Source: Podarcis melisellensis (lineage: Eukaryota). Taken from it: 64,000 bases of DNA. This document shows, in pieces, positions 49,766 through 64,000 of this stretch. How positions within the stretch are numbered: position 1 is the first letter of the stretch; each line of letters begins with the position of its first letter. A program made the position numbers and the translations under genes. The notes under the pieces were generated by a model. The model saw only the letters and a list, made by a program, of their open reading frames with translations. It made no database searches and was not told where the DNA came from. The stretch is from the NCBI GenBank assembly GCA_964234715.1, contig OZ174279.1. One strand, given 5' to 3'.

Positions 49766-50367
49766 TAGTTTTAATGCTGTTAATGTTTAGTTGCTTTTTA
49801 ATTCCTGGTTTTCTCCCTCCATGTTTCTTTAACCATTCTTGTTTTAAATCTGTAACCTGCCTTGAGTCCCATATGGGGGAAAAGGTGGGGTATAAATAAA
49901 TACATAATAATAATTACTAAAAACCAAGTTGTGTCATAAGGGTCTTCTGACAGTGGGTGGCCCAGAGGTGACACCTGCACCCAAATTGTTCCACACTTAC
50001 TGAATTTGCTCTGTGTCTAGGCTTAATGGCATACAGGACTGTTTCATTACCTTTACATCTGTTCAGCAGCTGGTGTGGTTTAGTCCCTCTTGTTCTCTGC
50101 AACAGGGTGGCATGATGTATCTTTTCACCGCATTAGGCAGAATAGGTGGGTTTGCTGGGGAAATCGTGGCAAGTTGGTGCCTCTGACATTGTACAGCCAT
50201 GGGCCAAATTACCTTGTGAGACCACATCTTGATCTGTTGTGCTGCTTGTTCCCCTGAGATCTTCTATTTGTACTGGCAAACAACTTAAGCTTTTGCCCTT
50301 TTTTTCCTCCTTTTTTCTTTTTGTTTTGTTCCTCCCCTGCCTCCGCCCCTCTCCCACATTTCTACAG

Positions 50368-50478
50368 CAGCAAAGGAGGGAAAAGGAATTAAGGAAACAG
50401 CAAGAGAGGGAGCAGCGACGGCATTATGAGGAGCAAATGCGCCGAGAAGAGGAGAGGAGGCGTGCCGAGCATGAACAG
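50368..50478 (+). CDS. TNIK: TNIK coding exon (111 nt; QQRREKELRKQQEREQRRHYEEQMRREEERRRAEHEQ)
   Basis: Long pyrimidine tract, ctacag| acceptor and |gtaacc donor; phase 0/0. Confidence 0.97.
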
Positions 50479-52965: not shown

Positions 52966-53052
52966 GAATACATCAGGCGACAGTTAGAGGAAGAACAGAG
53001 GCAGTTAGAGATCCTGCAGCAGCAATTACTGCAGGAGCAAGCTCTACTTCTG
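52966..53052 (+). CDS. TNIK: TNIK coding exon (87 nt; [29 protein letters not shown]), 29-aa cassette exon
   Basis: cccag| acceptor and |gtaatg donor; phase 0/0; corresponds to the 29-aa alternatively spliced segment of mammalian TNIK. Confidence 0.96.
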
Positions 53053-55366
53053 GTAATGGGGAGTCAGGATCCCTGTCGCATCCTTTGCCCAGCCCTTTCT
53101 GTGTATAATGAGACTGCATGTTATTAGCCAAATGTGTAACTGGGCCTTCAGACTTATAGGGTTGCCATCTCTTTTGGAGATTTGCCTTTCTCCTATACAT
53201 TATAAATCTGAGTACCTTAATTTGTTCAAGCATTGGCATTTGTAATACTTATTAAATTCCCAACACATTCAAATGTTTGGGGGAGCATGCAGTAATGGAA
53301 TGGCCGGCTGGTAGTCCGAGGGTTGGCTCTAGCCCAGGAAGCCATTTTATTTGGCCCTATCTAGTCAGGGCACATTGTTAAAAAGAGTTAAATATCCTAA
53401 GCCCTAACTAGATGTTACTTCAGAGCTTCATGATGTGTTTTACTTCTTCTTAAAAGCAGCTGCTAGGGCAGGCACAATTTGGATCAGAGGCATGACACTG
53501 ATAGAGGTTAACCCCTTCCCCTCCCCGTGCCACAGCCCCAATCCAAATCCACTCCTGGCTGCTGGTAGTTACAGAAGAGAAAATAAACAGGCAAGGATCT
53601 GCAGCTACTAGCATCTCTAGGGGAGTTAATTTAGATTGATTACACCCACAGCACAGAGGGAAATGAATTTTTTTCCTTGGTATTTGCACTAACATACAGG
53701 ACTGTTTAATTTTTTGTAGTAATAGTCACCTGCTATCTAGAGCTGGCCAGATTAAGGATTAAACATATATAGTCTGAAATGAGGATTAAGCACGTATAGT
53801 CTGAAATGCAGTATTCCTGCTACTGCTTCTAGGAAACCCTTGTTCATAGGAAAGCATGTGTCTTCTCCCTGAGTTACAGCCTGTGAGAGCAGTATTGAAG
53901 GGCAGGTGGACTACCAGTGACCAGGCTTGAAGTTACAAAACCAAAAGGCTCAGAATCAAAGTAGTCCTTGATTAAAACAACAACAATTTTAGGTGGCAAT
54001 CCTAAAAGTCTAGGCCAATGTGAGTGTGGAGAGTCTCGTTCAAGAATTATTTTGCCAACTCTTACCCAGGTTCACTCCCGTCACCTGGCAAGAGAATTGT
54101 CCAACTCTCTGCTGTGCTAAGGATAGTGTGCTGCAATGGTGTCTTCCTTGAATGCAAGCACTGCCACGCTCTGAATGTTTTTGTTGCTTTTCTGCCAATA
54201 ACTGGAGCAGCCATTGCTGTGCACGTCTTTTCCTCTGCTCAGTTCGCTTCTAGAACATCCTTCATTTTCATGGAAGCAACAGGCCTCTGCTGGGTTTATT
54301 GCAAAGCTATTAATTGAAAGCTACTGGCACTGTGTGCTGGAATACAATCTAACTGAAACGTACTTGCTCCCTGTAATCTCTTCTTGGTTTTATAGGATTC
54401 GACGGCATATTTCAGTTGCAGGCTGCTTAGCTTTACATTCCTGACAGAAACATTTTTGCACTGCCTTTTCATGCTGTTTACAGTTTTGACATGGTTTATT
54501 TGCTGAATTTCCTGCATATATACTCTTCCCTTTACTCTCCCCACCCTGCCACTTAAGCTAAATTTATATCTTGTCTTTATTTTGGATGTGAATTGTTATT
54601 CTTTTCATTTATCTTTTTAAAAAACAGTATTATATTTATCAGTGCTGTTGGAGAGGTCATGCCTTGTTTCCCTCTTCCCAATAGATCCATTAATTTATAC
54701 GACTGGACAGAGTATGTTAGACTTACCCAACCTAGAGCTCTCCAGATGTGTTGCTCCACAGCTCCCATCATCTCAAACCATAGGCCATTTAGCAGGGACT
54801 GATGGGAGTTTGAGTTCAACATCTGCAAGGCAATAGGTTGGGAAAGAATGGCATAGGCAAACCCTTCATTGCATAAATAATGTTTCCCTCCATCAGTTTC
54901 ATAACCACAGGAGGGACAGAACTTCCAGGCTATAAAATTACAAATTGGACAACTAACTGAACAAAGCAGCAAGTTTAAAATAAACTATTTAGAAAGAAAT
55001 ATGCTGCCTCAGCAACGGGTTTTCCAGACTTTTCTCTGGGCATGCAGTGCGTTCAAGCTAATTTTTAGATAACTCGGTGGTACCATCCAGATACCAAATA
55101 TGCATGATTTAGGAGGCATGCTTAGACTACAAGCTTAAACCGCTTCCACACTTGTTTCAGACTGTCACAATTTCCCAACAAAATGTGATGGTTTTGTGAG
55201 TATACCCCACTTCCCCCAAAGTTGTCACATTTGATGGAGCCTGAAAAGAGATGGTGTGGACCAGAGTTCCTGCTGTCTCAAGGCCACATAAATGTTTAGC
55301 ACATAGCTTCAGAAGTAGTGATGAGTAAGTAGTTCAATACATTGGGGGCAGGGTAAAGATCACAAA

Positions 55367-55403: not shown

Positions 55404-55681
55404 AACGATTCCTTTTTAATCAGCAATATGCTTTACAATGGACACCACCCAGACAATAACACAAGTAAAAAGTAAAAAGAGAAACCTGCTTCAACATCTG
55501 CAAGACCCAGGGTCCATTTGGTCTCTTAGGGTTACTACATCCTTGCTATTTGGGCTTCAGTTTCCACTTGATATGTATCTGTGTTTGCCTTTTGTTGTTT
55601 CCCTCAACACCATACTGACTGTGTACCTTTCAAGCTGCCATGCTGCTTCTAAATATTTGTTTGGCTTACATGTCTTGGTAG

Positions 55682-55885
55682 GAATATAAGCGCAAGCAAT
55701 TGGAGGAGCAGCGGCAGGCAGAGAGGCTACAGCGGCAGTTGCAACAGGAGCGAGATTACCTGGTCTCGCTGCAACAACAGCAGCAGCAACAGCAGAGGCA
55801 GGACCAGAGACCAGCAGAGAAGAAGCCGCTTTACCATTACAAGGAAGGGCTAAATGCCAGTGAGAAGCCAGCATGGGCAAAGGAG
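55682..55885 (+). CDS. TNIK: TNIK coding exon (204 nt; EYKRKQLEEQRQAERLQRQLQQERDYLVSLQQQQQQQQRQDQRPAEKKPLYHYKEGLNASEKPAWAKE)
   Basis: ggtag| acceptor and |gtagga donor; phase 0/0; TNIK-specific KKPLYHYKEG..EKPAWAKE. Confidence 0.96.
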
Positions 55886-58800
55886 GTAGGAATGGCCACG
55901 TTTTCTGTTTTGCACCTTTCCCTGGGCTAGGAAGCAAAAAATCAGCAGAGCCAAAGACATTTACAGTGTTTTGCAAATATTTTCAGTGCTGCCAAAAAAC
56001 CCCCACCCCTTTACCCCTTTTAAACGGCTACTTCACCTGCATTGCACTCATTTGTCCTCTGGTGTCATCACAGACCCAAATCTGATTGGCCACATGGTGT
56101 TATATGATGGCATGATCCCTGATTCATCCATATGACTAAACCAGGGAGCAAGAAGTATCAGCAGTGAGGAGAAAGGAAAGGAGACTGTTTTCACTATTGT
56201 TTCAAGTAAATATTTGCCCTATTGAAATTGCTGGTTTTTACTTGAAAATTAAAACTGCACAATGTTTGGTATAGCTGTAGCAGAAATACTATATAATAAA
56301 TACTGTTAAAAATGCAACCCTTTTAATGCCTACGTTAGACTGTTGCATATTCACCATGAAGTAAAGTCCTAGTTGTGGAGATTTGCTAGGAATCCGTTCT
56401 GAGGAATGGTTCCACCATGCTCCCCTCTACTTTGCTATTGTTACTCAAGAGTGCTTAGATAAAAGCCTTGTTACATACAGCTTGAAGGGGCTTTAGTACA
56501 TAAGTCTAGCGTTCATGAATGGAGTCCACAGAAGACTCACTGACATCACCTTATGGTAGAAAGTGGATTTGAGATTCTCATGTCAGGTGAATGAGGCCTC
56601 AGGCTTGCGCTATAATGAATTGTGTGAGGAGCGAAACTGCGCAACTGTGCAGCAACCCTCATGAACATCTCTCTGAATGCCACCGTTGTGCAAATCCATT
56701 TCTCAGAGGAAGTAGTCTGGAGGGTCCTTTTGGCCAATCTATGGCCTGTCTTCGGTATTAATGGTGACCAGCGTCAGTTCTCTGATGAAGTTAATTCGGG
56801 ATGAGTTTGCCATCAGCCTCTCATTTTGTTTTAAGTACCATTGATAGTGCACAGTTGCTCCCATTTTCTACCCACAGCATTCCAAAGATTCCCCAGGTAA
56901 TCCTCACATAATCTATAGATGGCATTGAAAAATAAAATGGATCTTCGCCTTGAGCGGGGAGGAGGGAGAAAAAAGAAGTGGGTGTGGGTGTGGGTGGGTG
57001 TGTACTGGGCATCCAATTTGCCTGTCCAACACCATTGTCTATAGGTGCCCACAGTGTCATCCTGGCTGATCCCCCACAGGTGGTCACTCTGGACTATCAG
57101 TACTGTACTGTAGGTATTGTGTTTTGAGACCAACCCCAAAAGGTACTTACTGGGCGGTTTTCTGCTGTAACGCACAGGAACTGAACCTAGATCAGTGGCT
57201 TTCAAACTTTGTACGTTAGGGAGCCCTTTCCACATATATTCACGCTCTGAGCAACATTTCCACATCTGCCACAAAAACCTCAGCACATCGCAGAAATCTT
57301 AGTTTCGTTCTAAGGTGCATGCTCAGTTCATGTGAGGGTATTGTCCATGTCTGATGGGTCTCAAACACTGCCTGACATGAACAGAGAGAGGGTGCTGTTG
57401 AACGCACTCTGTGTCCTTGTGGCAGGATGTTGCTGGATAATTCAAGTCCATGGCGGGCGATCAGTCTTTCTAGGAAGCTGCTCTCTGTTACTGATCGTCA
57501 TGTTGAAGAACTCAGGATCCCCCAGAACACAGTTTGAAAACCACCGGCCTAGACCGTGTTAGGAAGCTGCCTTCTGGCCTAGCATATCAGCAGCTCTTTC
57601 ATCATGCTATGGGTTCCATCCATTTTTATTTATTGCCTGATTGGCCACAGTTCTGTATGAAAGTCTTTCTCCGCACGTTGTGCTTCACGAGCTGGTTCAT
57701 CTTCTCCTGTGACCCTGTTGCATGTAATTTGTCTTGACGGCTGCTTATTTGTTAACTTGCTAAGGCGAGAGGCGGAGGGGGGGGGGGGGAACGACTTGAA
57801 AAAAGAGGACAAAGCTTTGAACACCGGCCCCAATTTGTATTTGTGGCTTATTACTGATGATGCCTGCTGATGGGTCAAGGTCAGGAACAGCCTGCTCTTA
57901 TCTCTGCTGTAACTGTGCCAGCTGCTGAATAAGAAACTAGCATCCCCCACACAACACGATTGCCCTGAAAGAAGGTATTGCCCATTCAAAAGGGGATTTC
58001 GGGTATCACTAGAGCAATGGTAATTGCTATCACTTCAAAAGCTTCTTGTCTGTTGCAGACTCTCCATTTGCAGGAGTGTCCTATACACAATTCTGTTTTA
58101 TGATGTAGAATTTAGATTCCTGAAAATCGCCACTATCATTTTCATTTCTTCTTATCTGAAAAGCAGATTTCTTGCCCTTGTGGCTGTGGGAATGTGCTAA
58201 ATGGGACTAGGAGTGGGGAGCTTTGTTCACGGATGGAAACACCTACATTGCATAGTTTTGTGTGCAATGGGAGCAACTTCCTCGTGGAAGTAGCCCCGAT
58301 CTAGCAGCTGTATTTTGATTGCCCCACAGATGTAATGGAGGAGTGTTGAGGGAAAGAGAGTCAAAATCCAAATGCCTTTTTTGTCATTTCTAATGGGGGG
58401 GGGGTTTCTCTTTCTCCTCTGTCAGTCAAGGAGCACTGAAATTGACTGGACAAAGTGACAACAGCTTCTATACTAGTCAATTTCATACCTAGAGGAAGGG
58501 AGGAGAAGGAGGAGGGTTCCTGAAAATCCTGAGCAGGAAGCAGAGCATACTGTTGAATTTAAATGATTTTTAATGGAATTACTTGTGAAATGCTTGCAGC
58601 ATTTTTGCACCCACATGGCCCTCATAGCAGCTGACAATAGTCAGACAGATAACTGTAAAAGGTATAAAAAGGGCAACCACAATGACTGAAATGTTGGAGC
58701 AATTTGCTTATGGGGGGTGAGAATATCTCAGCAGTAGCCAACATGGATTACATGTTCTAGCATCCCTGGCTACTGGCCTCGCTGCCTGGGGCTAATGAGA

Positions 58801-59564
58801 GTTGGAGTCCAACAAAATCCAGAGGGCACTATGTTAGCTACTTTGGGGGCTTCTTAGTTTAGGGGGGAAAGGTGACTAAGCAGGGTGTGATGGAGCTTTA
58901 TACAATTATGAATGCTTAGAGGGATTGGATAGAGAGATTGTTTTCACTCTCTCTTAACTCTGGAGTTCAGCATCATGCAATGGAATTGATTGGGCAGACA
59001 AAAGAAAATATTTAACTAACTTGGCAGGTTCACTGCTGCATGAGACAGTGGTGATGACCATTGGCATAGCTAGCTTTTAAAATGGGTTTAGAGCAATTTA
59101 TGGAAGACAGGTCCATAATAGCTAAATGGTACTTCCATGTTCAAAGTGAAGGTCCCACTGAATGCTGGTCGCTAGGTGGAGGGGGGAAGTGGGAGAGGGC
59201 TGGTGCCTTCATGTTCTCCTTGGGAAGTTCCCCAAAGCATTTGACTGCCCACTGTTAGAAATGGGATGCTGAACAAGACGGCCCCTTGATGTGTTCCATT
59301 CAGGTAGTTATTATGCATTCTCTGCAAAATCAGCCTTGCTGAAGAATGCTGTTCTGAGTGACCTTCTCTCACCTGTGAGTTAGAGCAACTAGCTTCCATG
59401 CAACCCTGGATTGGAGCTGAACTTTCCAAGCAGGCAGGAGCCCTGGTACTTCTTTTGTTAGAAGCTAATCATGGTGAAGGACATTTGCCAATAATTATAT
59501 ACTCGTGCAATTAACCAAAAACATGTGTTTTAATAGTTTGATTTCTGTAATCCTGCTTTCCCAG

Positions 59565-60665
59565 GTACATCAGCGAGCTTTTAATAACCCACCAGTTATT
59601 CCAGCTAAGCAGAACCACAGTTTCGTGCCCCAACAACTGGTGACTTATGTTACTGACAAAGGTGTTGCTCCACAATCCAACTCTAAGCCCTTTTTAAATA
59701 TTGTTAAACCTCGTGGTAGACAAAACCAACGAGCATTAGACCCTCACAGAAAGGACTTTCCGGATTCTGCTAAGCAAACACTCTGGGTGCCTGTTATTAA
59801 GATCTCCATGCCAAGTCCACAAGAAGAGCTAAAGAATAGACCCATCTTTATAGACCACAAAACCAGTCTTGGTTTTCATGAGCAGTTGGGGGAAAATGGC
59901 ATGAAATCCCCCAAAGGGTCTCGGTCTCATGGGTGCAGTCCTGAGAGGCAAATGAGATTGGAGGTCAAGTGTGTGTCTTCTCCCCACCTTCCAGAAGGAG
60001 GTAAGCCACCACTGCCTCCCTATAAAATCAAAATGAATTTCCAAGAACACAATGTGGACAAGGAGAGGAAGCAGCTTCATTATCATCTACATCCAAGTGT
60101 CATTACCTCTTCGAGGAGTGTTCCGTCATTATGCAATATCTCGGCAACACGTGATAACCTAGATCTGAGTGCTTCTAGTCCAGCATGCCTCTTGAGAAGG
60201 ATGAAGATACAAGCTGATGAGAAGCAGCAGCATCATGCATCTTTGGAGAGCCTCTTAGAACATCGCCAGCATCCCACTGGGGTCCATCATGTGCAGATGC
60301 AGAGGAAAAGAATAGGGCGAAGCATGGAAGAGCTTCTTGCTCTGGATCTTTGTCCACAAACTGCTCATCTGAATGTACCCAACTTGACATCTTTGTCTTC
60401 TAGCTCTCGCTCAGCATCTTTAAATTCCCTTTCATTTTCTTCCAACTCGGATCTGATTCAGTCTTCTAAATCTTGCCAGGGTAATTCTTCTTCTGGCATC
60501 ACTTTGCAGATGCCTCTGGCTTCATTTTCTAATTCCTCCTGTTGGTCTTCCAAACTTCCTTCTCGGGTATCTCATGCGAAGCAGACTCTGGGTGTGCATG
60601 TTCATAACTACATATCTCTGGCTTCGAGCACCCCGGACTTGAGATATGCTAGGCAGCGTCACTAA
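59565..60665 (+). CDS. Candidate alternative terminal coding exon of TNIK (366 aa, Ser/Pro/His-rich)
   Basis: tcctgctttcccag| acceptor in phase 0, matching the upstream exon; 366 stop-free codons of non-repetitive sequence; ATTAAA twice downstream. Confidence 0.65.
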   Translation, partial: VHQRAFNNPPVIPAKQNHSFVPQQLVTYVTDKGVAPQSNSKPFLNIVKPRGRQNQRALDPHRKDFPDSAKQTLWVPVIKISMPSPQEELKNRPIFIDHKTSLGFHEQLGENGMKSPKGSRSHGCSPERQMRLEVKCVSSPHLPEGGKPPLPPYKIKMNFQEHNVDKERKQLHYHLHPSVITSSRSVPSLCNISATRDNLDLSASSPACLLRRMKIQADEKQQHHASLESLLEHRQHPTGVHHVQMQRKRIGRSMEELLALDLCPQTAHLNVPNLTSLSSSSRSASLNSLSFSSNSDLIQSSKSCQGNSSSGITLQMPLASFSNSSCWSSKLPSRVSHAKQTLGVHVHNYISLASSTPDLRYARQRH

Positions 60666-60890
60666 AATGAGCCGGGGAGTGATTTCTCTCGCCATTGCCA
60701 ATAAGCTCTTGCCATTCTATAAGCTGGGGCTTGCTCAGGGGCTAGTGCCATGGCGGAAGCAAATTGTATCGAGCCAGGGAACTGGGTGTTGCTTTGCTTC
60801 TGGTGACTCCCTGAGCCTCACATGTCTTTGAAATTATTTTGCAAAACCGACAGCTGCAAAGCCAAGTCAATTAATGGGTTAGGTAAATCA

Positions 60891-60905
60891 ATTAAAAGCA
60901 TTAAA
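60891..60905 (+). terminator. Candidate polyadenylation signals (tandem ATTAAA)
   Basis: attaaaagcattaaa, about 225 nt after the stop at 60665. Confidence 0.4.
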
Positions 60906-62929
60906 AGCATTTTGTTAGAGTAAAAAGCACCTCCCTTTGAATATCTGTAGCTGATTCTTTTTAAAAATATTTTTAATACATATACTGACAAAAAACACGG
61001 AGGCCAGTTTAATTGACTGAAACGTGTTCTTGATAGGCTTGTTTCCTTGCCACTCAGAATTTAGCTGTTGGAAATACATAGAAAATAGCTTCTATTTGGG
61101 ACTTTATAGTTCTTTTAGGTATCCAGGCCATAAATGAGTCTAGTAGAAATAAGGCATACCAGAAGTTGCCTGATCAGACAGTATGTCCATTTATCCCAGT
61201 ATTATCTTTTCTAGCTGGCAGCAGCCCCCCAGGATCTCTGGTACAGATCTTCCCTATTACCTGCTTGCTGATTTGCTTCAAGATGCCAGGAACTGAACCT
61301 GGATGTTTCTACCTTTGAAACATTTGACCTATGCTATGGCTTCTTCCCAAAATGATTAAAGGCCACAAATTACGTGGCAGTGCCTTAATCATGTGCATGT
61401 ATTACAAGCCACTAGGAGATCTTCCATCTTTATCATTGGGAATACTAACCTCTTCTTTTCTATAACTGTAATAGAGTAAGTGGTGTATTTCTAATCATCT
61501 CAAGAACTTATTTCCAAAAATAAGTTCACCTTTGGCATCCTGCCACCACCCTTACTGTCTGTATTCTCATATCTTTTTTGTGAACTGCCCTGAGACCTCC
61601 GGGTATAGGGCGGTATATAAATTCAATTAATAATAATCATTATATATTTTAAAATTTCTGTATGATATTATACCTCAGTATAACTACCATATGATTATAT
61701 GCTATGATTTTAGGTGATTGTTTCAATCCAGTTTTCCACATATATTTTCCTATTTGCTTTTTTAACCTAGTAATTGCCTGCCCCCTTTTCTTGGAACAAT
61801 AGAGAAACACACACACACGACACAGCCCTTCTCTCTCTCTCTAATGCTCAGCTGTAGTTAATGTAAACCAAGGTTTTAAAACTGCCAACAAACCATGGCT
61901 TATGAGTTTGGTTTGTTCTGGTTTGTAAACTGCACTTAAGGTGAACAATCCAGTAAACCATGGCTTAGTGTTACATGCACAATATTTTTTAAAAAGAGTT
62001 TTGAGTTTCAAAAGTAGTTTGCTATGCAATGTATCCAGCTATGCACAAAACCACTTCTGGCTATTCAGAACTTCTAATAGAGTTATTTTGATCCTGGCCT
62101 AGATCAGGCTCCAAAGGATTCCTTGCTTACTTTTGCTCACTTGGTTTAAGTACAATGTCTAAAAAAAAAAAAAGTATAATTATAATAGTTGAAAATAGCG
62201 ATGGGTGCTCACTTGAAAATCAGTGATCATTCCTTTTGAATGCTGAAAAACCTTTGAGGGACTTTTCAAGCATTTGAGAGGATCACTTGCAAGGAGGCAG
62301 TTTCCCTCTCTCAGCTACACTACCTGCTACTCCCTCCGCCAAGGGGGAAAAGCTCCATCTTCCCAGCCAAGATAGCAGATGGCTGAAGTCTCGAAAAATG
62401 AGAGAGGCACAGTGCATCTCTCTCACTATCCAAAGCTAATCGCTACCTCATGATCTGGGTGTTTGTGGCAGGCTGCGATATCAGGTGTCACGGAAGAAGG
62501 TCCAGCATCCAAAACGCCCCTTTTGGAGTGATGGCATGTGATGCAGGGAACATAATGTTGCAGGAAACAATGGTTAAGGAGTGAGGATTGCTTAATATTA
62601 CTTGCATGCTCAAATTGTGATGAAATACTGATTGAGAAGAAGAATCAAATATGTTTTAAAATTACTTTTAAAGTGTGATTGCCTTTTACACTTTTGAACT
62701 TTTTATTGTGGTTGTGAAATGGTTTCCACCAGTTCGTGAGACTGGTGGACTTGAGGAGCCTCTTCCTGTATTATCACTGCACCTGAGACTGATTAGAGCA
62801 TAAATAAAGGCTAAACTCATCTTACTGCAAAGTGTGGTTTGTTCAGCTGTTTGCCTAAGAGTTATTTTTATAAACGTGGAAAACTTTGAAAAGCATATAA
62901 GCTGCTGGGCAGGGGTAATCTTTTAATAC

Positions 62930-63133: not shown

Positions 63134-64000
63134 ATCTGTTTACTCTTAATACCACCTGATCTTAAATCCATTTACATGGAAATAACTCCCATTGATTTCA
63201 GTTACTTCTAAGTGCATTCAGGACCATATAAAACTATCAGGGAAGCATTCCACTGATGGAATCTGAACTTTAGACTTGAAGACACATCAATAACTTTCTT
63301 GTGAAACAGATCTACTAAGCAGAAGACTCAGGTGTCTGTTCACTTGCCAGGTTGTGGAAATACTATCGGTTAAAATAGTTGAAGGGTAATACAAGTGCAT
63401 CTCATACTCCACTTTTTGGATTATTTACATTGCCTCCTTAGTCCGCTGAACATCCTGCACATTCCTTCAGGAGACAGGTTTTAGTCTGGTCATCTTTGGT
63501 CTAGACCTGAATGTAGGCATGTTTCCTGAAATTCCTTGGAGACCTATTGAAATAATGCTGTCACCCGCTAGATGTCATCCCAATATTTATGCAGATGCAT
63601 CTTTGTTCTGAAAACATATCGTTTCTTATTCTGTCTCCCAACTTGCCTCATTTCCATGTGCTGCTGCTCAGTAGCCTTAAGATGCTGACAGACTAACCCT
63701 AGATAACCCATCATAGCTGATTTACAATGCAGTACTGTATCTTTTTTGGATTGCCAAATGCTGTAGGTGACAATTCCTACCCCCAGATGCCCTTGTTAAA
63801 CCTTTTGGGGGGAAGAACTACTCCATACCTAGCTTCTTAACATTAAGCTGATCTTCTTGAAAGCCGCAACTGATTCAGTTATGTAGACTGCTCTTCCAGA
63901 TCAAGCTCATTTCACAACAAAGTAGTCATGAGCATTCAATTATGACATCCAAAGCAAAGGTTATTTTAATCCTGTTGTCCTGTGGTAGTTTGCTGCCAAA

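What the first reader, a model, noticed from the sequence alone, without database searches (positions are those of the whole stretch)
59565..60905. Unannotated-looking 366-codon alternative terminal exon of TNIK: a predicted CNH-less kinase isoform with a novel disordered tail
Seen: 3.7 kb after the ...KPAWAKE exon (ends phase 0) there is a strong acceptor (ctgtaatcctgctttcccag|G) opening a phase-0 frame VHQRAFNNPP...PDLRYARQRH* with no stop for 366 codons. The frame opens only about 29 codons upstream of the acceptor. The DNA is non-repetitive, of ordinary GC content and shows no TE motifs; under uniform codon use the chance of such a run is about (61/64)^366, roughly 2e-8. Tandem ATTAAA follows at 60891-60905. 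The peptide resembles a signalling IDR, with PLPPYK (PxxPxK SH3 class II / LPxY WW-type) and basophilic phospho-like motifs RSVPSL, GRSMEELL, RSASLNSL and SSTPDL. Known: canonical TNIK continues VEERSRLN.. and ends in the Rap2-binding CNH domain; I do not recognise this segment from mammalian isoforms. Inference: intronic polyadenylation gives a roughly 900-aa protein (kinase, coiled coil, new tail) uncoupled from CNH-dependent regulation, possibly lineage-restricted.
Basis: partly seen in the sequence, partly recalled or inferred. Interest (0 to 1): 0.9.

Follow-up and report, generated by a model that had tools for sequence, protein, structure and literature searches.

The report
Stop-ending alternative last exon of TNIK
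The long open frame is a real, expressed exon of the signalling kinase gene TNIK that ends the message early in this lizard lineage, giving a kinase without its regulatory end domain; the same exon is already annotated as an internal exon in turtles and crocodilians, so only its use as a last exon is new.

Summary
A 366-codon frame (59565-60662, TAA at 60663-60665) follows a strong acceptor 3,679 bases after the TNIK exon that ends ...KPAWAKE.

Contigs of four small public runs (four studies, three related species) carry the GT..AG joint 55885|59565. The tail exon is about as deep as the upstream exon.

Seven squamates keep the acceptor and a 361-375 codon frame. Omega is 0.50 (2dlnL about 88 against 1), and all 44 alignment gaps are multiples of three. 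AlphaFold2 predicts disorder.

The 'novel, lineage-restricted' part does not hold. The exon is orthologous (43-48% identity) to a 372-379 codon internal exon in RefSeq TNIK isoforms of turtles and crocodilians (about 1,620-1,745 aa). Its first ~147 codons are in salamander isoforms, and a mammal-type contig holds an open copy.

Here a stop lies three codons before the old exon end, and the old donor reads GG.

Verdict: a real CNH-less TNIK mRNA isoform, made by turning an ancient cassette exon into a last exon. Protein and function are untested. Moderate interest.

The parts
50365..50478 (+). TNIK coding exon ending ...RRAEHEQ; its 3' end (50478) is joined directly to 55680 in the RNA contigs. 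The start is approximate.
   Evidence: tblastn with turtle and gecko TNIK. The loose end of the contigs at 55680 matches 50447-50476 with one mismatch.
52966..53052 (+). 29-codon cassette exon (EYIRRQ...QALLL), skipped in the contigs that carry the tail exon.
   Evidence: 100% tblastn match to P0010 residues 15-43. All four runs join the preceding exon straight to 55680.
55680..55885 (+). TNIK coding exon EYKRKQ...KPAWAKE; ends in phase 0 before gtagga.
   Evidence: Sequence; tblastn 96% to turtle TNIK residues 474-539; contig pieces 55680-55883 in all four runs.
55886..59564 (+). Intron of 3,679 bases removed in the RNA contigs (GT..AG). It holds a conserved non-coding block at 57624-58085.
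   Evidence: Joint 'skips 3679, GT..AG (cut +2)' in X1, X2, X7 and X10; block aligned to snake and Phrynosoma at about 70%.
59535..59564 (+). Branch-point and polypyrimidine tract with acceptor AG, nearly unchanged across squamates.
   Evidence: The 30 bases before the exon are aligned in seven squamates and in Phrynosoma.
59565..60665 (+). Coding part of the alternative last exon: 366 codons plus TAA. It encodes a basic, Ser/Pro-rich tail predicted to be disordered.
   Evidence: orthologs; omega 0.50; all gaps multiples of 3; mean pLDDT 43; S 14.8%, P 8.2%, pI 9.9.
60675..60680 (+). Relic of the ancestral 5' splice site of the cassette exon (old exon end 60674). The window reads GGGAGT; the related species in the four runs read T at 60676, giving GTGAGT.
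   Evidence: DNA alignment with squamates that keep CTG|GTGGGT; turtle and alligator proteins end ...PL|VEERSRLN at the homologous point; 60676 G>T in X1, X2, X7 and X10 (table 3).
60666..61400 (+). 3' untranslated part seen in the same contigs as the coding part. The contigs go on for a further 180-271 bases beyond 61400; the true 3' end is unknown. ATTAAA at 60891, 60900 and 61355.
   Evidence: Records 1, 7 and 19, table 8; hexamers.

Best explanation
This is an alternative last exon of TNIK, derived from an ancient large cassette exon. Shown: the exon's 3' splice site is used with the constitutive KPAWAKE exon, and the frame continues in phase 0 for 366 codons to a TAA. Shown: in turtles and crocodilians the orthologous exon is open to a 5' splice site and is annotated as internal, joining the next exon (VEERSRLN). 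In the window a stop lies three codons before that old exon end, and the old GT donor reads GG. Inferred: with the donor unused or lost, the transcript is ended by cleavage and polyadenylation in the following intron. The mRNA would then code for about 880-905 residues: kinase domain, coiled coil and a conserved disordered Ser/Pro-rich basic tail. It would lack the rest of the intermediate region and the CNH domain. Inferred from published work on CNH-less fragments: such a protein would be a kinase freed from CNH-dependent inhibition and Rap2 input. The tail's conserved serine motifs (GSRSxGCSP, SSPH, SRSxPSL, RSxSLNxLS, STPDL) would serve as phosphorylation or docking sites.
For: - Splicing: the joint 55885|59565 with GT..AG ends occurs in four runs from four studies and three species. 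Two contigs (3,186 and 4,136 bases) are continuous from earlier TNIK exons through the tail exon and past the stop. The upstream intron is empty in three of the four runs, so the runs are RNA.
- Abundance: tail-exon contig depth is about that of the upstream exon (195 against 199 in X2; one unbranched contig in X1 and X10).
- Coding constraint: seven squamates keep a 361-375 codon frame and the acceptor. ML omega is 0.50, with lnL -5181.4 against -5225.2 at omega 1. Pairwise pN<pS gives p from 1e-4 to 1e-12, and 44 of 44 gap runs are multiples of three. The indels listed inside the frame in the close relatives are 3, 3 and 6 bases, against 14, 9, 1, 4 and 3 in the 3' untranslated part and 2, 1, 1 and 5 in the intron (table 4).
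- Orthology to annotated TNIK exons.
- Old donor and stop.
- Disorder.
- Function of CNH-less forms: Xenopus TNIK kinase fragments are the active species and CNH fragments are suppressive (PMC3439448).
Against: - All RNA evidence comes from assembled contigs of related species, not raw reads of the window's own species. There is no cleavage site, strand, tissue or quantitative isoform ratio.
- The runs are only guessed to be RNA by the tool, although the spliced contigs show it.
- The related species keep a consensus GTGAGT donor just after the stop. A spliced, NMD-prone form cannot be excluded there.
- Constraint is weak (omega 0.5).
- In Phrynosoma the last third of the exon is out of frame.
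- There is no protein-level evidence.
Confidence: 0.8

Rival explanations
1. Disabled cassette exon: the exon was functional as an internal exon, as in turtles. In this lineage it acquired a stop, and its transcripts are unproductive by-products (NMD targets or retained-intron RNA) with no selected protein product.
For: A stop lies only three codons before the ancestral exon end, and the related species keep the consensus donor. Constraint is weak (omega 0.5). Phrynosoma has a duplicated and frameshifted copy.
Against: Omega is significantly below 1 in pairs that include lineages whose stop or donor change rules out cassette use (window, snake, L003, L007), and across the tree. All gaps are in frame. 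The exon form is about as deep as the upstream exon in the runs, which is not expected for an NMD substrate. The contigs run through the donor unbranched. Five squamate lineages carry different changes that rule out cassette use, yet four of them keep the whole frame and Phrynosoma about two thirds of it.
Confidence: 0.12
2. Independent transcript: an internal promoter in the intron drives a transcript that holds only this frame, so the product is not a TNIK isoform.
For: In X2 unspliced contigs cover 57007-59592 at about one sixth of the exon depth, while 55894-56968 is empty. A conserved non-coding block lies at 57624-58085.
Against: Contigs in all four runs join the exon to TNIK exons. There is no conserved start codon before the acceptor. 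The frame is in phase with TNIK. The hole in X2 may be a filter or divergence effect, as the tool itself warns.
Confidence: 0.04
3. The exon still works as an internal cassette here, giving a long isoform of about 1,730 aa as in turtles, through another donor or stop read-through.
For: Orthologs in three other squamate contigs (L004, L005, L006) keep an open frame and a GT at the old donor. An internal GT at 59640 would give an in-frame 25-codon piece, like the Crotalus adamanteus model.
Against: The TAA comes before the old exon end and the donor reads GG in the window. No branch or joint leaves the exon in any of the four runs.
Confidence: 0.03
4. Chance open frame or exonised mobile element.
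For: None beyond the absence of a Pfam match.
Against: It is single-copy. The only relatives among 1.84 billion representative proteins are orthologs at the TNIK locus. It is conserved with in-frame gaps and spliced.
Confidence: 0.01

Closest known systems
Long predicted TNIK isoforms of turtles and crocodilians, e.g. XP_065413829.1 (Chrysemys picta bellii X4, 1739 aa) and XP_059587126.1 (Alligator mississippiensis X1, 1737 aa); in part also salamanders (Lissotriton XP_078522323.1, 1507 aa)
   Same: The exon is homologous and sits at the same place, directly after ...KPAWAKE in phase 0. It starts VQQR..NNPPV.PAKQNH and ends ...SSTPDLR... It is 43-48% identical to the window's tail and shares the same conserved serine motifs.
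   Different: There the exon (372-379 codons) has no stop and is joined to VEERSRLN and on to the CNH domain. Here a TAA precedes the old exon end, the donor reads GG, and the RNA runs on unspliced. Those isoforms are automatic predictions; I found no paper on them.
Alternative last exons, or hybrid internal-terminal exons, made by intronic polyadenylation (concept; e.g. bioRxiv 10.1101/2021.05.27.446076, listed)
   Same: One exon serves as internal in some settings (other reptiles, possibly some squamates) and as terminal in others. The result is a C-terminally truncated protein with a private tail.
   Different: Here the switch is fixed between lineages by a stop, and in the window by loss of the donor. 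It is not shown to be regulated within one species. The poly(A) site is not mapped.
CNH-less kinase fragments of Xenopus TNIK and MINK made by proteolysis (PMC3439448)
   Same: The product keeps the kinase and part of the central region and lacks the CNH domain. In that work such fragments are the active signalling forms and the CNH pieces are inhibitory.
   Different: Those fragments arise by cleavage of the full-length protein. Here the truncation is encoded by RNA processing and adds 366 specific residues. No activity was tested here.
The classical TNIK splice isoforms of mammals (three optional modules of 29, 55 and 8 residues; from my own knowledge of the gene's description, not tested here)
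   Same: The tail exon lies between the constitutive KPAWAKE exon and the optional 55-residue VEERSRLN module. The contigs seen here also skip the 29-residue module.
   Different: Those isoforms all keep the CNH domain and differ by short in-frame modules.
GenBank snake gene models (Crotalus horridus KAL7990991.1, Naja naja KAG8136157.1)
   Same: They join KPAWAKE to the same exon at the same acceptor.
   Different: They leave the exon through ad hoc internal donors before the stop to reach VEERSRLN; one even translates a polypyrimidine tract. They look like prediction artefacts rather than evidence of a cassette.

Membership tests
Exon of the TNIK gene | Lies between TNIK exons on the same strand and in a compatible phase | tested here: met
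   TNIK exons for residues about 212-540 lie at 6985-55885 on the + strand. The upstream exon ends in phase 0 and the frame starts in phase 0.
Exon of the TNIK gene | Spliced to TNIK exons in RNA | tested here: met
   Joint 55885|59565 in four runs; two contigs are continuous with earlier TNIK exons. These are related species, not the window's own.
Exon of the TNIK gene | Orthologous to a segment of annotated TNIK proteins | tested here: met
   Turtle, crocodilian and salamander RefSeq TNIK isoforms carry it after KPAWAKE.
Alternative last exon (intronic polyadenylation isoform) | In-frame stop inside the exon | tested here: met
   TAA at 60663-60665. No difference is listed there for run X1, whose differences fill the printed table.
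Alternative last exon (intronic polyadenylation isoform) | No splicing out of the exon; RNA continues into the following intron | tested here: met
   Contigs are continuous from 59563 to 61400 and 180-271 bases beyond. The only other joint (60902>61083, AA..GA, with 10 letters between) is a species difference.
Alternative last exon (intronic polyadenylation isoform) | Mapped cleavage and poly(A) site | not testable with these tools
   Only contigs were available. They pass ATTAAA at 60891, 60900 and 61355 and stop near a repeat-like stretch at about 61,570-61,640.
Internal cassette exon (as in turtles and crocodilians) | Open frame up to the 5' splice site | tested here: not met
   The TAA lies three codons before the homologous exon end at 60674.
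Internal cassette exon (as in turtles and crocodilians) | GT donor at the homologous site | tested here: not met
   The window reads GG at 60675-60676. The related species read GT but their contigs run through it.
Poison (NMD) exon | Stop followed by a downstream exon junction in the mature RNA | tested here: inconclusive
   No such junction was seen in contigs of four runs. Contigs drop rare forms, and the next exon lies outside the window.
Mobile-element-derived exon | Repeated copies or similarity to element proteins | tested here: not met
   Single copy in the window, no Pfam hit, and only TNIK-locus orthologs in protein searches. RepeatMasker itself was not available.

The most novel reading that the evidence does not exclude
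The terminal, CNH-less form is the main selected use of this exon in squamates, and perhaps an old second use in all tetrapods. Five squamate lineages carry different changes that rule out internal use: the window's group by a stop and then a lost donor, snakes by a stop, L003 and one gecko by donor changes, and Phrynosoma by a frameshift. Four of them keep the whole frame under purifying selection; Phrynosoma keeps about two thirds. In four RNA data sets the tail form is about as abundant as all TNIK upstream exons. If so, lizards and snakes run much of their TNIK signalling through a kinase with no CNH or Rap2 control and a private phospho-regulated tail. The open copy in a mammal-type contig would then hint at an overlooked exon in mammals.
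Probability: 0.3. Interest if true: 0.65.

Novelty: new variant of a known kind. Interest (0 to 1): 0.45.

Why it matters
TNIK is a much-studied kinase in Wnt signalling, synapse biology and as a drug target. Its regulation is thought to depend on the C-terminal CNH domain.

This is a natural, conserved and apparently abundant mRNA that encodes a CNH-less TNIK with a 366-residue conserved tail. It would be a ready-made experiment on what the kinase does without that domain. It is also a clear case of a cassette exon turned into a last exon during evolution.

It also flags a large TNIK exon, conserved across reptiles and partly in salamanders, for which I found no paper. For genome annotation, squamate TNIK models should carry this isoform. 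Several GenBank snake models splice around the stop artificially.

Tried and rejected
- Pfam, tandem repeats, the ESM Atlas feature search (best 0.86, below the level that means anything) and Rfam over the exon gave nothing for the tail.
- AlphaFold2 gave no fold (pLDDT 43), so no fold search was run.
- Search for a squamate RefSeq isoform of about 880-905 aa: none was found with Phrynosoma (lengths 284-905) or Crotalus (lengths 691-2200) tail segments as query. This is a limited test (word-based, clustered collection), not proof of absence.
- Branch-specific constraint by ancestral states: the machine does not offer ancestral sequences, so I dropped it and used pairwise tests.
Exons were handled separately by reference.
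- The protein cluster of P0012/P0024 occurs in 161 contigs, including metagenomes, and could be host contamination, possibly human. I did not fetch or compare its DNA.
- The mammal-type contigs L008-L010 were used only to recognise the flanking TNIK exon. I do not take them for human, because the exact protein occurs in only a few runs of one series. I cannot name the species and did not pursue them.
- Papers: no report of a TNIK last-exon, intronic-polyadenylation or CNH-less splice isoform.

Full report
**1. What is in the sequence**

The TNIK exon EYKRKQ...KPAWAKE ends at 55885 in phase 0, before gtagga. After 3,679 bases comes ctgtaatcctgctttcccag|GTA at 59564|59565. The frame then runs 366 codons to TAA at 60663-60665, and it is open from 59478, 29 codons before the acceptor. 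ATTAAA stands at 60891 and 60900.

The stretch has no tandem repeats, no second copy in the window, ordinary GC content and no Pfam family. The translated tail is Ser- and Pro-rich (14.8% and 8.2%) and basic (pI 9.9). The window carries TNIK exons for residues about 212-540 on the same strand. The next canonical exon (VEERSRLN) is not in the window; in Phrynosoma it lies about 7.4 kb after the tail exon.

**2. Is it expressed and spliced as proposed?**

I laid window 55500-61400 on the contigs of four small public runs from four studies and three related species; ids are coded.

- **Junction.** All four carry a joint that skips 3,679 bases with GT..AG ends, which is exactly 55885|59565.
- **Continuity.** In X1 and X10 a single contig (3,186 and 4,136 bases) runs from earlier TNIK exons through 55680-55885 into 59563-60902, and on to 61400 plus 209-271 bases. 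In X2 the exon contig reaches 61400 plus 180 bases.
- **RNA, not DNA.** The upstream intron is empty in X1, X7 and X10, apart from a short repeat and two small pieces at about 59,000-59,300. So these runs are RNA, and the region after the stop belongs to the same mature transcript.
- **Abundance.** Contig depth of the tail exon is about that of the upstream exon: 195 against 199 in X2, 3-7 against 11.5 in X7, and one unbranched contig in X1 and X10. Depth per contig is a crude measure, but it suggests that the form is not rare in these samples.
- **No splicing out.** No joint leaves the exon. The 60902>61083 'skip' has AA..GA ends and 10 letters in between, so it is a species difference.
- **29-residue cassette.** The letters before 55680 in all four runs match 50447-50476. 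The contigs therefore also skip the 29-codon cassette at 52966-53052.
- **3' end.** It is not fixed. Contigs pass ATTAAA at 60891, 60900 and 61355 and stop near a repeat-like stretch at about 61,570-61,640.

**3. Is it coding?**

Protein searches found open orthologs of 311-397 residues in Logan contigs, plus two GenBank/UniProt squamate models (alignment A1).

- Six contigs with DNA (a viperid snake, two geckos and three other lizards) keep the acceptor tract almost letter for letter and a frame of 361-375 codons.
- Pairwise Nei-Gojobori dN/dS is 0.31-0.58.
- A codon model gives omega 0.50, with lnL -5181.4 against -5225.2 at omega 1, so 2dlnL is about 88.
- pN is below pS with p from 1e-4 to 1e-12, including the two closest pairs. 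In a DNA-level alignment all 44 gap runs are multiples of three.
- In the close relatives, the indels listed inside the frame are 3, 3 and 6 bases. Those listed in the 3' untranslated part are 14, 9, 1, 4 and 3 bases, and those in the intron 2, 1, 1 and 5 (table 4).
- Alignable DNA extends only about 30-210 bases before and up to about 110 bases after the frame. This pattern is typical of a regulated exon.

The frame is under real, if weak, purifying selection, as is usual for disordered regions. AlphaFold2 with 14 orthologs gives mean pLDDT 43 and only one short helix (206-222). Invariant or near-invariant columns include GSRSxGCSPxR, SSPH, PSRSxPSL, LDLSxSxP, RSxSLxxLS and STPxL.

**4. What it is related to**

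A search with the Crotalus segment, allowing long proteins, showed that the exon is not new. RefSeq TNIK isoforms of about 1,620-1,745 residues carry a 372-379 residue insert directly after KPAWAKE, followed by VEERSRLN and the rest of the protein. The species are:

- **Turtles:** Chrysemys, Malaclemys, Pelodiscus, Chelonoidis, Mauremys, Gopherus and Caretta.
- **Crocodilians:** both Alligator species, Gavialis and Crocodylus.

The insert is 43-48% identical to the window's tail. Salamander isoforms (Lissotriton, Pleurodeles) carry the first ~147 residues.

GenBank snake models (Crotalus horridus, Naja naja) join KPAWAKE to the same acceptor. They then leave the exon through ad hoc internal donors to avoid the stop. 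A mammal-type contig also holds an open 407-codon copy, 28-35% identical, about 1.3 kb after the exon; its flanking exon reads ...MSPSEKPAWAKE.

No squamate RefSeq isoform ending in this exon was found. No paper on such an isoform was found either.

**5. How the cassette became a last exon**

The turtle and alligator exon ends ...PL|VEERSRLN. The homologous point in the window is 60674|60675. The states found are:

| Sequence | Frame up to the old donor | Old donor |
|---|---|---|
| L004, L005, L006 (three squamate contigs) | open | GT kept (CTG|GTGGGT); could still serve as cassettes |
| Snake (L001) | TAG nine codons before | GT kept |
| L003 | open | TT |
| One gecko (L007) | open | AT |
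| Phrynosoma (L002) | in-frame partial duplication, then a stop; last third out of frame | not assessed |
| Window | TAA three codons before the old exon end | GG at 60675-60676 |
| Related species in all four runs | no difference from the window's TAA is listed for X1 | T at 60676, giving consensus GTGAGT; their contigs still run through it (table 3) |

In this group the stop therefore came first, and the donor was lost later in the window's species. Five squamate lineages carry different changes that rule out cassette use. Four of them keep the whole frame and Phrynosoma about two thirds. This argues that the terminal use is what selection maintains in squamates; that step is an inference.

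**6. Likely working**

- **Shown:** an mRNA exists that codes for the TNIK kinase domain, the coiled coil (without the 29-residue module) and this tail, and stops before the rest of the central region and the CNH domain. Its length is about 878-907 residues by turtle numbering.
- **Inferred:** 3'-end formation in the following intron competes with, or replaces, splicing at the weak or lost donor.
- **Inferred from PMC3439448:** a CNH-less TNIK would be an uninhibited kinase. In that work CNH-less Xenopus TNIK and MINK fragments are the active species and CNH fragments are suppressive. From general knowledge of the family, such a form would also be uncoupled from Rap2, which binds the CNH domain. 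The conserved serine motifs suggest phospho-regulation or docking.
- **Not tested:** any of this at the protein level.

**7. Rivals**

- **Unproductive by-product of a disabled cassette (0.12).** It fits the weak constraint and the Phrynosoma decay. It does not fit the abundance, the in-frame evolution in lineages without cassette use, or the unbranched read-through.
- **Independent intronic transcript (0.04).** It rests only on partial intron coverage in X2.
- **Continued cassette use (0.03).** The stop excludes it for the whole exon.
- **Chance frame or mobile element (0.01).** Already refuted.

**8. Verdict**

The claims of a novel, lineage-restricted sequence and of the 60891-60905 poly(A) site do not hold.

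This is a new variant of a known kind: an ancient, already-annotated TNIK cassette exon used as a last exon in squamates. Interest is moderate. It would rise if the terminal form proves to be the main TNIK product in lizard tissues, or if it exists in other tetrapods.

**Limits**

- The RNA evidence is from contigs of related species only; tissue, strand and 3' end are unknown.
- Organisms of most Logan contigs are unnamed.
- The P0012/P0024 cluster was left untouched because it might be human-derived.

Noticed in passing
window 61347-61468 (- strand): Full-length match to U6atac snRNA (RF00619, 56.9 bits against a gathering score of 33), lying antisense within the 3' untranslated part of the tail exon. 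The AGAGA-box region is damaged (three bases missing, several changes), so it looks like a pseudogene.
   Followed up: partly
window 57624-58085: Non-coding block inside the intron before the tail exon, about 70% identical to a viperid snake (L001 2722-2922) and Phrynosoma (L002 10678-11127). No long frame. It could be a splicing or transcription control element for the exon.
   Followed up: partly
window 63487-64000 (also 54287-54643 and 62229-62282): Further blocks alignable to the Phrynosoma TNIK locus at 71-76% without an evident frame. The 62229-62282 block lies just before a small exon (RKFPAPPAKLYCPDKDRCHK) of the GenBank Phrynosoma model, which may be a prediction artefact.
   Followed up: no
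L008-L010 (5866-7152), contigs of one run series: A mammal-type TNIK contig (flanking exon ...LKQERDYLVSLQHQRQEQRPVEKKPLYHYKEGMSPSEKPAWAKE) holds an open 407-codon ortholog of the exon about 1.3 kb downstream. It has an acceptor-like tract, and a Val (GTN) codon stands where the donor should be. Related clusters contain many shorter frames, so the exon may be decaying or variable in mammals. The species is unknown. A sister cluster (P0012/P0024) seen in metagenomes was not fetched, because it could be human-derived.
   Followed up: partly
L002 13208-14805 (Phrynosoma platyrhinos, GCA_020142125.1): The orthologous exon carries an in-frame tandem duplication of about 170 codons, then a stop. Its last third is present but out of frame. 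The GenBank model JD844_007594 stitches it to VEERSRLN.
   Followed up: partly
window 59640-59645: CTG|GTGACT inside the exon would end an in-frame 25-codon piece holding the most conserved segment (VxQRxxNNPPVIPAKQNH, conserved also in newt and the mammal-type contig). A Crotalus adamanteus model uses the equivalent 24-codon piece. None of the four runs shows such a joint.
   Followed up: partly
window 57007-59592 in run X2: Unspliced contigs cover this part of the intron at about one sixth of the exon depth, while 55894-56968 has none. This could be pre-mRNA with a filter or divergence hole, or a start inside the intron; it is unexplained.
   Followed up: no
window 52966-53052: The 29-codon TNIK cassette (EYIRRQ...QALLL) is skipped in the contigs of all four runs that carry the tail exon.
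   Followed up: yes
window 61570-61640: The stretch ...ctgccctgagacctccgggtatagggcggtatataaattcaattaataataat looks like the tail of a lizard short interspersed element (from memory, not tested). The RNA contigs end about here, probably because assemblies break at repeats.
   Followed up: no
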